Shown piece after piece: positions 24,201 to 27,079 of a DNA stretch of 64,000 nucleotides. Source of the stretch: Macrostomum lignano (lineage: Eukaryota); the NCBI GenBank assembly GCA_002269645.1, contig NIVC01002232.1, positions 62,001 through 126,000 of the forward strand. The letters are read 5' to 3'. The notes under the pieces are model-generated. The model was not told the origin of the DNA, did not search any database, and was given only the letters and a program-made list of their open reading frames with translations. The translations under genes and the position numbers were made by a program. Numbering within the stretch: position 1 is the stretch's first letter; every line of letters starts with the position of its first letter.

Positions 24201-27079
24201 TCGAGATTGGAAATAGTATCTCAGGGTTGGAGATGGAATCTCAGGATTGAAGACGTGATCTTGGGATCGGAGATGGGATCAAAGGATTGGAGATGGGATG
24301 TAGGGATTGGAGATAGGATCTCAGGATTGGAGATGGGATCTCAGCATTGGAGATGGGATCTCGATATTGGAGATAGGATCTCAGTATTGGAGAGGGGATC
24401 TCAGGATTTGAAATGGGATCTTGGGATTGGAGATGGGATCTTGGGATTGGAAATGAGATCTCGGGATTGTAGATGGGATCTCAGGATTGTAGATGGGATG
24501 TAGGGATTGGAGATGGGATCTCGGGATTGTAGATGTTATTTGGCAATTGGAGATGGAGGATTAGGGTTAGGGTTAGGGTTAGGGTTAGCATCAGAAATTT
24601 GTGGAGGACCTCAAAAAACAGAAAAAGAATGGAGCTTCCACTTCTCCATCCTCAGCCTATTCGACAACATCATTGAAATGTACGACGCCTTCAAAGTTGA
24701 GACGATCGGCGATGCGTACATGGTGGCCTCGGGAGTGCCCATCAAGAATGGCGATATGCACGCTTGTGAGCCTCTGTGTAGTTGCCGGGGGACTCCCGAT
24801 GGGATGAAGGACTGCGAGATTTGCTAGAAGATTATTATCATTGGGAGAGGCGGACAGGGAGATGCAGGCAGGGAGATGCAGGTGGGAGATGCATGGTGGG
24901 AGATGCAGGCAGGGAGAGGCAAGCAGAGAGGCAGGCAGGGAGAGCCAGGCAGAGAGGCAGGCAGAGATGCAGGCAGGGAGATGCAGGGTGAGAGATGCAG
25001 GGTCAGAGAGGCAGGAGGGAGAGGCAGGCAGGGAGATGCAGGGTGAGAGATGCAGGGTCAGAGAGGCAGGAGGGAGAGGCAGGCAGGGAGATGCAGGGTG
25101 AGAGAGGCAGGCAGGGAGACGCAGGGTGAGAGAGGCAGGCAGGGAGACGCAGGGTGAGAGAGGCAGGCAGGGAGACGCAGGGTGAGAAAGGCAGGCAGGG
25201 AGACGCAGGGTGAGAGAGGCAGGCAGAGAGACGCAGGGTGAGAGAGGCAGGCAGGGAGACGCAGGGTGAGAGAGGCAGGCAGAGAGGCAGGCAGGGAGAC
25301 GCAGGGTGAGAGAGGCAGGCAGGGAGACGCAGGGTGAGAGAGGCAGGCAGGGAGACGCAGGGTGAGAGAGGCAGGCAGGGAGACGCAGGGTGAGAGAGGC
25401 AGGCAGGGAGACGCAGGGTGAGAGAGGCAGGCAGAGAGGCAGGCAGGGAGACGCAGGGTGAGAGAGGCAGGCAGGGAGACGCAGGGTGAGAGAGGCAGGC
25501 AGGGAGACGCAGGGTGAGAGAGGCAGGGTCAGGGAGAGGCGGGCAGGGAGAGGCAGGCTGGAAAATCAATATGCCACTAACAGTAGTATTCATCTACTTG
25601 GGTTTCCCTTCTCAGCGGAGATCGCCTCAGTGGCGCTGGACATTCGCGACGCAATGATGGAATTTTCCACCGGAGCCCTGGAAAAAGGCCGCGTAAAAAT
25701 TCGCATTGGGATTCACTCAGGTGAAGAAAAAAATCATTTTGATTCAAAGCACCATCTGTTATTGACTAATATTTGGCTGCTTTAATTTTTCAGGAGCCGT
25801 GGTTGCCGGGATCGTGGGCACCAAGATGCCGCGTTACTGTCTGTTTGGCGAGACGGTGCACATCGCCAACTGCATGGAGTCCACCGGGCAGCGTAGGAAT
25901 AAAAAATTGAAATAAAATGCTCTAGTATTACTAAAAGTATGAGACGAGTTTTTTTTCACAATTTTTTCAGCATCGAAAGTCCAGATTAGCGAGCGAACTT
26001 TCGGCCTGTTGGAGATCACCAACCAGTTTGAGCTGGAATTTCGCGGCGAAGTCGAAGTTCAGGTAGGAAAAAATAATTCAAATTTTTGTTAACATTTCTC
26101 ATAAATTTCCTGTGCCTTCGAACGCATTGCAGCGGCGAGATAAGGACTAAATTTCCGTTTTTAGCACTAAAAAAACTTATTACTCTCTGGACTTTGAGAT
26201 TACAGATTGAGCAATCTAGGATTCCCTGACTGGGATTCCCCTGACGGGGATTCCATTGACTGGGATTTCCCTGACTGGGATTAACCTGACTGGGATTCCA
26301 GATCATCTGGTTGATTTCCACTGACTGGGATTCCCTTGATTAGGATTCCCCCGATTGGGATTCCCCTGGCTGGGATTCGACCGACTGGGATTCGACCGAC
26401 TGGGATTCCACCGACTGGGATTCCACCGACTGGAATTTCCCTGAATGGGATTCCCCTGACTGGGTTTCCACCGACTGGGATTTCCCTGACTAGAATTGCC
26501 CTGACGAGGATTTAACTGACTGGGATTCCACCGACTGGGATTCCACCGACTGGGATTCCTCTGACTGGGATTCCTCTGACTGGAATCCCATTGACTGGAA
26601 TTCCCCTGACTGGGATTCCCCTGAGTGGGACTCCCCTGACTGGGATTTCCCTGACTGGGATTCCCCTGACTGGGATTTCCCTGACTGGGATTCCCCTGAC
26701 TGGGATTGCCCTGACTGGGATTCCCCTGACTGGGATTGCCCTGACTGGGATTCTCCTGACTGGGATTGCCCTGACTGGGATTCTCCTGACTGGGATTCTC
26801 CTGACTGGGATTTCCCTGACTGGGATTCCCCTGACTGGGATTCCCCTGACTGGGATTCCCCTGACTGGGATTCCCCTGACTGGGATTCCCCTGACTGGGA
26901 TTCCCCTGATTGGAACTCCCCTGACTTGGATTCCCTAACTGGGATTCAGTTGACTGGGATTTCTAATTCTGCCTCATTTGTCTATGGTTTTTATTGAGAA
27001 TAAATAACCTAATAAACCAATATTTCTTCACTTTTAGGAGAAAAAGATGAAGACTTACTGGCTGCATGGGAAAATTTGA
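18230..27079 (+). CDS. NIT-domain membrane guanylyl cyclase (TM-NIT-TM-coiled coil-cyclase, no kinase-homology domain), 648 aa, 11 exons
   Basis: Exons 18230-18551, 19219-19501, 20787-21012, 21395-21649, 22596-22808, 23866-24065, 24656-24765, 25616-25720, 25794-25892, 25971-26062, 27038-27079; all GT-AG with matching phases, total 1947 nt. NIT motifs [32 protein letters not shown]. Cyclase motifs [45 protein letters not shown]. Confidence 0.93.
18830..19000 (-). mobile_element. Possible degenerate 3' fragment of a non-LTR retrotransposon in guanylyl cyclase intron 1
   Basis: Minus frame [23 protein letters not shown]...FCLF...RFICECPAF loosely resembles the C-terminal Cys-rich region of I/R1-like LINE ORF2 (recalled motif, not searched). 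Confidence 0.3.
19517..20640. repeat. 29/37-bp mixed-unit minisatellite (acttggggtgagattgtgag...catcatc), guanylyl cyclase intron 2
   Basis: Read directly; starts about 15 nt after the donor at 19502. Confidence 0.95.
21152..21312. repeat. 40-bp tandem repeat, about 3.5 copies, guanylyl cyclase intron 3
   Basis: acattcggaaagaaatcttcctaccccacaacggggatgt repeated. Confidence 0.85.
22955..23755. repeat. 20-bp minisatellite (ccatctccaatcccgagatc), guanylyl cyclase intron 5
   Basis: Read directly; same family as 24085-24555 in opposite orientation. Confidence 0.95.
24085..24555. repeat. 20-bp minisatellite (gatctcgggattggagatgg), intron 6, inverted copy of the intron-5 family; followed by (TTAGGG)4
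   Basis: Unit is the exact reverse complement of the intron-5 consensus. ttagggttagggttagggttagggttag at about 24561-24588. Confidence 0.93.
24845..25558. repeat. 28-bp purine-rich minisatellite (gagaggcaggcagggagacgcagggtga), intron 7
   Basis: Read directly. Confidence 0.95.
26219..26962. repeat. 15-bp minisatellite (gactgggattcccct), intron 10
   Basis: Read directly; gives the TGIPL periodic ORF artefact. Confidence 0.95.

What the first reader, a model, noticed from the sequence alone, without database searches (positions are those of the whole stretch)
25794..27079. The NIT-cyclase lacks the transition-state Asn and Arg: pseudo-cyclase or obligate heterodimer subunit
The canonical GDTVNTASRMES reads [12 protein letters not shown] (Asn->His at CAC 25859-25861; Arg->Cys at TGC 25871-25873), and the VKGKG loop reads VQEKK. 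Both metal-binding Asp (FSD, IGD) and the GTP-specifying Glu and Cys (KVE, RYC) are kept, and the ORF is intact. In class III cyclases the Asp pair comes from one protomer and the Asn/Arg (N1025/R1029 of adenylyl cyclase II C2) from the other. A homodimer should therefore be weak or dead, but the protein could supply the metal-binding half to a partner, like the sGC alpha subunit, or act as a dominant-negative or scaffold sensor.
Basis: partly seen in the sequence, partly recalled or inferred. Interest (0 to 1): 0.75.

Follow-up and report, generated by a model that had tools for sequence, protein, structure and literature searches.

The report
Flatworm NIT-cyclase with one-sided active site
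A flatworm gene for a nitrate/nitrite-sensor-type guanylyl cyclase has kept the metal-binding half of its active site but lost the half that the second protomer supplies, so it most likely works only when paired with a different cyclase subunit, as the alpha subunit of soluble guanylyl cyclase does.

Summary
The window carries one intact 11-exon gene (18230-27079, + strand, 648 aa) for a TM-NIT-TM-coiled-coil-cyclase protein, a NIT-GC. The source is Macrostomum lignano or a very close relative.

Its cyclase domain reads [12 protein letters not shown] and VQEK-K where relatives read GDTVNTASRMES and VKGKG. The loss is wider than reported. All four residues a protomer gives to the partner's site are gone: Asn->His, Ser->Asn and Arg->Cys in helix alpha4, and the Lys of the beta7/beta8 loop. 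Everything on the metal/triphosphate side is kept, as are 15 of 16 conserved NIT-region positions.

Of 9 deviations from 68 near-invariant cyclase columns, 7 fall in these two motifs (P about 2.5e-5). That pattern argues against random decay.

Among NIT-GC cluster representatives, 14 are "alpha-like" (Asp pair kept, N/R lost), 11 are the mirror "beta-like" form and 40 are canonical. Clean alpha-like and beta-like forms co-occur in two nemertean species.

The best reading is an alpha/C1-type subunit of an asymmetric heterodimer. No partner lies in the window and none could be retrieved, and activity is untested. I rate it a new variant of a known kind, of moderate interest.

The parts
18230..27079 (+). 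Whole NIT-GC gene: 11 exons, 648 aa. Exons: 18230-18551, 19219-19501, 20787-21012, 21395-21649, 22596-22808, 23866-24065, 24656-24765, 25616-25720, 25794-25892, 25971-26062, 27038-27079.
   Evidence: All 10 introns are GT-AG and the CDS of 1947 nt is open. The exons were found independently by tblastn with homologues. Pfam gives NIT at aa 114-371 (7e-23), the HNOBA tail at 422-455 and Guanylate_cyc at 462-646 (1.7e-60, 204 bits).
18230..18551 (+). Exon 1: cytoplasmic N-terminus and first transmembrane segment (aa ~64-90).
   Evidence: First ATG of the open frame. The hydrophobic segment is [22 protein letters not shown].
19219..21649 (+). Exons 2-4: NIT sensor domain, with both family-conserved arginines (Arg123, CGC 19263-65, in LQIERG; Arg259, CGA 20956-58, in GLQRALG).
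   Evidence: Pfam NIT match. In the N-terminal/NIT part, 15 of 16 columns that are at least 85% conserved among 35 canonical NIT-GCs are kept.
22596..22808 (+). Exon 5: second transmembrane segment (aa ~384-412) and start of the signalling helix.
   Evidence: Hydropathy and translation.
23866..24065 (+). Exon 6: coiled-coil end ([14 protein letters not shown]) and cyclase beta1 with the metal-binding Asp475 (YFSDIV; GAC 23989-23991).
   Evidence: The Asp is kept.
24656..24765 (+). Exon 7: [10 protein letters not shown] with the GTP-specifying Glu515 (24699-24701) and the second metal-binding Asp519 (24711-24713).
25794..25892 (+). Exon 9: [25 protein letters not shown]. Lys582 and Cys587 are kept. 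The degenerate alpha4 helix has Glu591 (for Asp), His594 (for Asn; CAC 25859-61), Ile595 (for Thr), Asn597 (for Ser; 25868-70) and Cys598 (for Arg; TGC 25871-73).
25971..26062 (+). Exon 10: ends with ...RGEVEVQ. Gln635 (CAG 26060-62) replaces the first Lys of KGKG.
27038..27079 (+). Exon 11: [13 protein letters not shown] plus stop. This is the rest of the degenerate beta7/beta8 loop (Gly->Glu and one residue deleted) and the last strand.
   Evidence: There is no alternative exon with KGKG, NTASR or TYWL anywhere else in the window.

Best explanation
The gene encodes a membrane NIT-domain guanylyl cyclase subunit of the 'alpha / C1' type. Its sensor domain, transmembrane segments, signalling helix, cyclase fold and the metal/triphosphate-binding half of the active site (Asp475, Asp519, Lys582) are intact. 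The four residues that a class III cyclase protomer inserts into the partner's site are all replaced: alpha4 Asn, Ser and Arg, and the beta7/beta8 Lys.

Shown: both sites of a homodimer would lack the NxxxR motif and the gamma-phosphate Lys.

Inferred: a homodimer would be dead or very weak. The protein makes cGMP only as a heterodimer with another NIT-GC, either canonical or 'beta-like', that supplies Asn/Ser/Arg/Lys to a single competent site built on this protein's Asp pair. The second, degenerate pocket (partner's Asp pair plus this protein's His594/Cys598) would be non-catalytic and possibly regulatory, as in sGC, transmembrane adenylyl cyclases and NeoR/RGC. Two different NIT sensor domains would then control one catalytic centre.
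For: (1) The residue pattern is selective. Of 9 deviations from 68 near-invariant cyclase columns, 7 are in alpha4 and the KGKG loop. The remaining 2 are conservative (V->A, Y->F), and all metal-side residues are kept.

(2) The rest of the protein looks constrained. The CDS is intact with 10 GT-AG introns. In the NIT region 15 of 16 conserved columns are kept, including both arginines, and in the C-terminal part 68 of 80. The protein is only 36-38% identical to its nearest known relatives, so many substitutions have been filtered.

(3) The motif converges on known non-catalytic-side subunits. The window reads HIANC, human sGC alpha reads TLANK and AC8 C1 reads DIANK. In this segment sGC alpha scores above sGC beta and GC-A.

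(4) The family context fits. Among 68 NIT-GC cluster representatives with complete sites, 40 are canonical, 14 alpha-like, 11 beta-like and 3 have lost both sides. Among other receptor GCs sampled, 195 are canonical and 5 degenerate (Fisher P = 1e-14). The KGKG Lys is kept in 10/10 beta-like and 38/38 canonical members but in only 6/13 alpha-like ones, so it is lost together with N/R.

(5) Clean alpha-like and beta-like members co-occur in Lineus longissimus (P0167 and P0227 versus P0191) and in Tubulanus polymorphus (P0193 versus P0187 and P0239).

(6) The nearest neighbour of the window protein is the alpha-like Lineus P0167, in 184/200 NJ bootstraps. The two share the same one-residue deletion in the beta7/beta8 loop and the rare V->A in DVYKVE. 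This suggests an old, maintained alpha-like lineage.

(7) There are precedents. ODR-1/DAF-11 is an obligate heterodimeric receptor GC (PMC5225109). NeoR lacks NxxxR (T455/K459), is inactive alone and forms one active plus one allosteric site with RGC1/2 (PMC12264004).
Against: - No partner was identified. The window holds only this one cyclase gene, and the rest of the genome could not be searched.
- No near-identical Macrostomum protein was found in the protein database, although neighbouring genes of the homologous M. lignano contig are annotated. There is therefore no evidence that the gene is expressed.
- The WIN+P0167 grouping may be long-branch attraction. Raw identity to the canonical Solemya protein is slightly higher.
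- The replacing residues differ between relatives (H/C here, L/Y in Lineus, mostly S/T and K elsewhere). This fits relaxed constraint as well as a new function.
- The only adjacent pair I found (tardigrade, L002) is not cleanly complementary. The 'alpha-like' member also lacks the FSD segment.
- The comparison set of 'other' receptor GCs was picked by similarity to the query. That biases it towards canonical sequences.
Confidence: 0.55

Rival explanations
1. Non-catalytic pseudo-cyclase. The protein forms homodimers, or heterodimers that poison a partner. It acts as a NIT-domain sensor, scaffold, GTP-binding module or dominant-negative regulator without contributing to any working catalytic site.
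For: The NxxxR motif, the alpha4 Ser and the KGKG Lys are all lost. NeoR-cat is inactive alone, and restoring N and R did not rescue it (PMC12264004). Three NIT-GC representatives, and the tardigrade P0188, have lost both halves, so fully dead NIT-GCs seem to exist.
Against: Both metal Asp, the P-loop region, Lys582 and the base-specifying Glu/Cys are all retained. The protein is otherwise highly diverged at 36-38% identity. A purely non-catalytic protein has no reason to keep these residues, and the members that lost both sides show that they can drift.
Confidence: 0.2
2. A gene copy on its way to decay, or unexpressed. Macrostomum lignano carries several diverged copies of this locus, so one copy may be under relaxed selection and the catalytic changes may be early degeneration.
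For: The window is collinear with M. lignano contig NIVC01000150.1 at only ~90-97% DNA identity. Its eIF3d differs from both annotated M. lignano eIF3d proteins, so at least three versions of the region exist. No annotated Macrostomum NIT-GC protein turned up. The introns are full of minisatellites, and inverted arrays flank exon 6.
Against: There is no stop, frameshift or splice-site loss in 11 exons. The changes are concentrated in two functional motifs rather than spread out (P = 2.5e-5), and the NIT domain is fully conserved. The same one-sided pattern recurs in many phyla. The loop change is an in-frame deletion shared with Lineus P0167, which points to an old state and not a recent one.
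Confidence: 0.12
3. A still-active homodimer with altered chemistry. His594 takes over the ribose contact of Asn, and nearby lysines (EKKMK) replace the KGKG Lys and the Arg. This gives a slow or differently regulated cyclase.
For: His can hydrogen-bond. In several substrate-bound cyclase structures the conserved Asn does not contact the sugar directly (PMC7384201). Three Lys remain in the shortened loop.
Against: Cys cannot replace the charge of the transition-state Arg. That Arg is present in 131/133 relatives and is reported as essential (Yan et al. 1997, cited). Four contacts are changed at once.
Confidence: 0.1
4. Sequencing or assembly error in the two codons.
For: Each of the two codons is one base away from the canonical one (CAC vs AAC, TGC vs CGC).
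Against: Five substitutions lie within eight codons, and a separate in-frame 3-nt deletion with two substitutions lies in another exon. All hit the same functional face. Errors would not be coordinated in this way.
Confidence: 0.02

Closest known systems
NIT-domain guanylyl cyclases (NIT-GCs; Moroz et al. 2020, PMC7400543; Platynereis NIT-GC1/2, Jokura et al., bioRxiv 10.1101/2023.08.02.551600)
   Same: The architecture is TM - NIT - TM - signalling helix - class III cyclase domain, and the conserved NIT arginines are present. The best database hits are NIT-GCs of molluscs, brachiopods, annelids, nemerteans, echinoderms and tardigrades.
   Different: Platynereis NIT-GC1 is described as having a highly conserved cyclase domain and makes cGMP on its own in COS-7 cells. 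The window protein lacks NxxxR, the alpha4 Ser and the KGKG Lys. Neither paper mentions heterodimers or degenerate sites (0 occurrences; only 5-6 papers mention NIT-GCs).
Soluble guanylyl cyclase alpha subunit (GUCY1A1; PDB 4ni2_A, 3uvj_A, 6jt0_A)
   Same: It keeps MPRYCLFG but has lost the Asn, Ser and Arg of alpha4 (NNVTLANKFES versus [12 protein letters not shown]; both carry the Ser->Asn change). It supplies the metal-binding side to a single active site with beta (PMC1435932).
   Different: It is soluble, with H-NOX/PAS domains instead of a NIT domain. By whole-domain similarity the window protein is much closer to receptor GCs (237 bits to GC-A versus 156 to alpha1). The resemblance is therefore convergent and not shared ancestry.
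C1 domain of transmembrane adenylyl cyclases (e.g. AC8, PDB 8buz)
   Same: C1 reads DVDIANKLES where C2 reads KTVNLASRMDS. The same IAN signature and the same division of labour apply.
   Different: The two halves are fused in one polypeptide, the substrate is ATP, and the degenerate site binds forskolin.
NeoR / RGC1-RGC2 rhodopsin guanylyl cyclase heterodimers of chytrid fungi (PMC12264004)
   Same: This is a sensor-fused membrane GC that lacks NxxxR (T455, K459). It is inactive alone and pairs with a canonical paralogue to give one active and one allosteric site.
   Different: The sensor is a rhodopsin, the organisms are fungi, and the partner genes are clustered. No partner gene lies within the 64-kb window here.
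C. elegans ODR-1 / DAF-11 receptor guanylyl cyclases (PMC5225109)
   Same: These are animal receptor-type GCs in which each monomer provides essential catalytic residues to a single site, making an obligate heterodimer.
   Different: They have a classical ligand-binding ectodomain plus a kinase-homology domain and no NIT domain. They belong to a different lineage.

Membership tests
NIT-GC (NIT-domain receptor guanylyl cyclase) | NIT domain (PF08376) present | tested here: met
   Pfam NIT, aa 114-371, E = 7e-23, 82.7 bits against a cut-off of 24.9.
NIT-GC (NIT-domain receptor guanylyl cyclase) | NIT domain flanked by two transmembrane segments | tested here: met
   There are only two strongly hydrophobic 19-residue windows, at aa ~64-90 and ~384-412, on either side of the NIT domain. 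This is a hydropathy estimate only.
NIT-GC (NIT-domain receptor guanylyl cyclase) | Conserved NIT arginines at the helix-bundle interface (LQxERG, GxQRAxG) | tested here: met
   Arg123 and Arg259 are present. In the NIT region 15 of 16 conserved columns are kept. The feature is described in PMC7400543.
NIT-GC (NIT-domain receptor guanylyl cyclase) | C-terminal class III cyclase domain of the receptor-GC type with GTP-specifying Glu and Cys | tested here: met
   PF00211 at 204 bits. The best solved relative is ANP receptor 1 at 237 bits. Glu515 and Cys587 are present.
Catalytically self-sufficient homodimeric guanylyl cyclase | Asp pair, NxxxR, alpha4 Ser and beta7/beta8 Lys all on the same chain | tested here: not met
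   The Asp pair is present. Asn->His, Ser->Asn, Arg->Cys and Lys->Gln.
Alpha/C1-type subunit of an asymmetric class III cyclase heterodimer | Metal-binding Asp pair and triphosphate-side residues retained | tested here: met
   Asp475, Asp519 and Lys582.
Alpha/C1-type subunit of an asymmetric class III cyclase heterodimer | Transition-state Asn/Arg (NxxxR) and the gamma-phosphate Lys lost | tested here: met
   His594, Cys598 and Gln635. The motif resembles sGC alpha and AC C1.
Alpha/C1-type subunit of an asymmetric class III cyclase heterodimer | A partner subunit in the same organism that supplies Asn/Arg/Lys | not testable with these tools
Beta-like and canonical NIT-GCs exist in other species.
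Alpha/C1-type subunit of an asymmetric class III cyclase heterodimer | Physical heterodimerisation and partner-dependent activity | not testable with these tools
   This needs co-expression and assay.
Pseudogene | Premature stops, frameshifts, lost splice sites, or substitutions spread evenly over conserved positions | tested here: not met
   The CDS is open over 11 exons with GT-AG introns. Deviations are clustered in two motifs.

The most novel reading that the evidence does not exclude
NIT-GCs as a family have repeatedly split into alpha-like (Asp pair only) and beta-like (Asn/Arg/Lys only) subunits. Many invertebrate NO/nitrite-sensing cyclases would then be obligate asymmetric heterodimers, a membrane-bound parallel to sGC in which two different NIT sensors gate one catalytic site. 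The flatworm protein would be the alpha-type member. Its degenerate pocket carries a His-x3-Cys pair on one face of helix alpha4, which could serve as an allosteric, metal-sensitive or redox/S-nitrosylation-sensitive site.
Probability: 0.3. Interest if true: 0.7.

Novelty: new variant of a known kind. Interest (0 to 1): 0.55.

Why it matters
NIT-GCs are a recently recognised, barely studied class of animal cyclases. Only one member, Platynereis NIT-GC1, has been shown to make cGMP in response to an NO donor.

About 40% of NIT-GC lineages appear to be one-sided, in two complementary ways. If so, single-gene expression assays, knock-downs and gene counts will misjudge which proteins are sensors and which are enzymes, and co-expression pairs become the functional unit.

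The flatworm gene gives a concrete, testable case in a laboratory model, since Macrostomum has transgenesis and RNAi. It would also be another independent origin of the asymmetric 'one active site plus one regulatory site' design seen in sGC, transmembrane adenylyl cyclases and NeoR/RGC.

Tried and rejected
- **Look-ups with the spliced protein.** I used the six canonical NIT-GC hits as a profile instead.
- **Exact-ORF look-ups.** I tried these to reach other assemblies or homeologues of the locus: the eIF3d last exon, the ENSA-like ORF, and the NIT-GC exon 1 and exon 2 ORFs. All gave 'not on record'. I therefore could not fetch the homeologous NIT-GC copy, and no dN/dS was computed.
- **Synteny with the Lineus gene.** I looked for shared neighbours between the window and the nearest relative (L001). 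None was found, and the intron structure is only partly shared.
- **Tandem alpha/beta gene pairs.** Owenia P0243 and Tubulanus P0193 have no cyclase neighbour within 10 kb. The tardigrade pair is adjacent, but its 'alpha-like' member also lacks the FSD segment in the genomic DNA, so I do not count it as a clean complementary pair.
- **Alternative or mutually exclusive exons.** I searched the window for exons with canonical NTASR, KGKG or TYWL. There are none.
- **A paralogue in the window.** There is none.
- **RNA editing.** I considered it as a rescue. A-to-I editing of CAC gives CGC (Arg), not Asn, and TGC has no A. Rejected by inspection.
- **Literature.** I searched for prior description of heterodimeric or degenerate NIT-GCs and for Macrostomum NIT-GCs. 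Nothing was found.
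Full report
**What is in the sequence.**
The coordinates given (25794-27079) cover the last three exons of a larger gene on the + strand. I reconstructed an 11-exon model from 18230 to 27079.
- Every intron is GT-AG, and the 1947-nt CDS is open and ends in TGA at 27077-27079.
- The exons are recovered independently by tblastn with homologous proteins.
- The 648-aa product has a Pfam NIT domain (aa 114-371, 7e-23), the tail of HNOBA (the signalling helix) and a Guanylate_cyc domain (aa 462-646, 1.7e-60, 204 bits).
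- Two hydrophobic segments flank the NIT domain.
- This is the architecture described for NIT-domain guanylyl cyclases by Moroz et al. 2020 (PMC7400543) and Jokura et al..

**Check of the observation.**
- CAC at 25859-25861 and TGC at 25871-25873 are as stated. The peptide is [23 protein letters not shown].
- HMMER alignment to the solved ANP receptor 1 and to the AC8 C2 domain places His594 and Cys598 on the Asn and Arg of the NxxxR motif. It places VQEK-KMK on MKGKGKVR, with a one-residue deletion.
- The kept residues are Asp475 (FSD), Asp519 (IGD), Glu515, Cys587 and Lys582 of GxKMPRY.
- Two more losses belong to the same picture. The alpha4 Ser is Asn597, and the first Lys of KGKG is Gln635.
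- According to the RhGC-GTP structure paper, the 'other' subunit contributes the beta7/beta8 Lys (gamma-phosphate), the transition-state Arg, and the alpha4 Asn and Ser that orient the ribose (PMC7384201). All four are replaced here.

**Is it more than chance?**
- I aligned 133 receptor/NIT cyclase domains from the searches. In them, 68 columns are at least 95% conserved.
- The window protein departs at 9 of these columns: D->E, N->H, S->N and R->C in alpha4; K->Q, G->E and one G deleted in the loop; and two conservative changes (V->A, Y->F) in DVYKVE.
- Seven of the nine fall in the 12 conserved columns of the two motifs (hypergeometric P = 2.5e-5). The motifs were defined after seeing the data.
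- Against 35 canonical full-length NIT-GCs, 15 of 16 conserved N-terminal/NIT columns are kept, including both arginines proposed to bind the ligand. In the C-terminal part 68 of 80 are kept, and 8 of the 12 deviations are again in the two motifs.
- No alternative exon with canonical motifs, and no second cyclase gene, exists in the window.
- This pattern is the opposite of random decay. One functional face has been given up and everything else is held.

**Source organism.**
- The neighbouring eIF3d gene (about 49971-59451) is 98% identical to two Macrostomum lignano proteins, and the next best hits are 86% and then below 70%.
- The window is collinear with M. lignano contig NIVC01000150.1, with the PH/FYVE gene and then eIF3d in the same order, at about 90-97% DNA identity.
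- The window therefore comes from M. lignano or a very close relative. It is a diverged copy (homeologue, haplotype or sister taxon) of an already sequenced locus.
- No Macrostomum NIT-GC protein appeared in either protein search. The gene seems not to be annotated, and I have no evidence on expression.

**Family context.**
- The six closest full-length homologues (Solemya, Lingula, Paralvinella, Amphiura, Diadema, Paramacrobiotus; 32-38% identity) all have canonical GDTVNTASRMES and KGKG.
- A profile of these six, searched against 1.84 billion cluster representatives, returned about 70 NIT-GC lineages. I scored ten active-site columns in each.
- Among NIT-GCs with complete sites, 40 are canonical and 14 are 'alpha-like'. 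The alpha-like ones keep both Asp and have lost Asn and/or Arg. They typically read x-I-A-S-K and have a degenerate KGKG loop.
- A further 11 are 'beta-like'. Their first Asp is replaced by G/S/N/E/V/R, often with changes around the second Asp, while NTASR and KGKG are perfectly kept. Three have lost both sides.
- Among the other receptor GCs in my sample, 195 are canonical and 5 degenerate (Fisher P = 1e-14). That set was selected by similarity to the query and so leans canonical.
- The KGKG Lys is kept in all beta-like and canonical NIT-GCs but in only 6 of 13 alpha-like ones. It is therefore lost together with Asn/Arg, as expected if these residues act in one site.
- Species names show clean alpha-like and beta-like members together in two nemerteans. 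In Lineus longissimus these are P0167 and P0227 versus P0191. In Tubulanus polymorphus they are P0193 versus P0187 and P0239.
- One-sided forms also occur in molluscs, annelids, brachiopods, hemichordates, echinoderms, priapulids, tardigrades and crustaceans.
- A tandem pair in the tardigrade Paramacrobiotus is adjacent. It is not cleanly complementary, because the N/R-less member also lacks the FSD segment in the genome.
- Owenia and Tubulanus members have no cyclase neighbour within 10 kb.

**Position of the window protein.**
- In a neighbour-joining tree of 63 full-length NIT-GCs, its sister is the alpha-like Lineus P0167 (GTTVLIAGYMEN, IKGQ-KRK), in 184 of 200 bootstraps.
- The two share the one-residue loop deletion and the rare V->A in DVYKVE.
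- Both are long branches, and raw identity to the canonical Solemya protein is marginally higher. Long-branch attraction cannot be excluded.
- If the grouping is real, the one-sided state predates the flatworm-nemertean split and has been maintained since.

**Mechanism.**
- Shown: the protein has an intact sensor, membrane anchors, signalling helix, cyclase fold and metal/triphosphate side. It lacks the four residues that a protomer supplies in trans.
- Established knowledge: in class III cyclases the Asp pair and the NxxxR/Lys set come from opposite protomers. The Asn and Arg are reported as essential (Yan et al. 1997, as cited). Subunits lacking NxxxR (sGC alpha, AC C1, NeoR) work only in asymmetric dimers with one active and one regulatory site (the sGC alpha motif is verified, the AC8 C1 motif). 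Obligate heterodimeric receptor GCs exist in animals (ODR-1/DAF-11).
- Inferred: the flatworm protein is the alpha/C1-type subunit of a heterodimeric NIT-GC. Its homodimer is dead or feeble. With a canonical or beta-like partner, one site is competent and the other is a degenerate pocket lined by His594/Cys598.
- I put this at about 0.55.
- The rivals are a non-catalytic sensor or dominant negative (0.2), a redundant copy beginning to decay or not expressed (0.12), a weakly active homodimer with altered chemistry (0.1) and sequence error (0.02).

**Novelty.**
The NIT-GC family is known, and asymmetric cyclase dimers are known. The two NIT-GC papers contain no mention of dimers, heterodimers or degenerate catalytic sites, and only five or six papers in the library mention NIT-GCs at all. 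The finding is therefore a new variant of a known kind. It is a flatworm NIT-GC of the alpha type, and behind it lies a family-wide split into complementary one-sided forms that appears not to have been described.

**Limits.**
No partner, no expression data, no activity data and no dN/dS are available. The homeologous copy of the gene exists in public data but could not be reached with the tools.

Noticed in passing
window 22954-23751 and 24098-24535: Exon 6 of the cyclase gene (23866-24065; 200 nt, carries the FSD metal Asp) is flanked by inverted arrays of the same 20-nt minisatellite. There are 40 copies of GATCCCATCTCCAATCCCGA in intron 5 and 22 copies of its reverse complement in intron 6. 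The arms are about 400 nt and about 81% complementary. They could pair in the pre-mRNA and favour exon-6 skipping (a frameshift) or a circular RNA.
   Followed up: partly
window ~24561-24588: An interstitial telomere-like run (TTAGGG)4 lies inside intron 6, just upstream of exon 7.
   Followed up: no
window 19566-20642, 24843-25558, 26219-26961: Most introns of the gene are largely made of minisatellites: a 29/66-nt unit in intron 2, a 28-nt G-rich unit in intron 7, and a 15-nt unit GGATTCCCCTGACTG x49 in intron 10. The long 'ORFs' they create on both strands are artefacts.
   Followed up: partly
window ~2000-4800: A long tandem satellite with a period of about 69 nt. It shows up as regularly spaced TWWLFNVRHGGS translations in all three + frames.
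   Followed up: no
window 49971-59451 (+), 44761-46090 (-), 34744-35199 (+), 14008-14349 (-), 16105-16776 (+): The neighbouring genes are eIF3 subunit D (98% identical to M. lignano BOX15_Mlig010075g1/g2), a PH+FYVE (phafin-like) gene, an endosulfine/ARPP-19-like ORF, a tetraspanin-like first exon, and a Lys/Asp/Ala-rich 223-aa ORF just upstream of the cyclase gene. The names other than eIF3d and PH/FYVE rest on my reading of the translations.
   Followed up: partly
window 42726-64000 versus L005 (M. lignano GCA_002269645.1, NIVC01000150.1:88461-120902): The window is collinear with, but only about 90-97% identical to, this M. lignano contig. Its eIF3d differs from both annotated M. lignano copies at about 12 of 569 residues. 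The locus therefore exists in at least three diverged versions.
   Followed up: partly
L002 10001-15080 and 16239-22049 (Paramacrobiotus metropolitanus BHEN01000144.1): Two degenerate NIT-GC-type genes sit head to tail, 1.2 kb apart. The first (P0188) lacks Asn/Arg/Lys and also the FSD segment. The second (P0229) has Asp->Val but keeps NTASR and KGKG.
   Followed up: partly
proteins P0155-P0297, scored: About 40% of NIT-GC cluster representatives have one-sided catalytic sites, in two complementary classes: 14 alpha-like, 11 beta-like and 3 that have lost both. This compares with about 2.5% of other receptor GCs sampled. I found no description of this in the NIT-GC literature available here.
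   Followed up: yes
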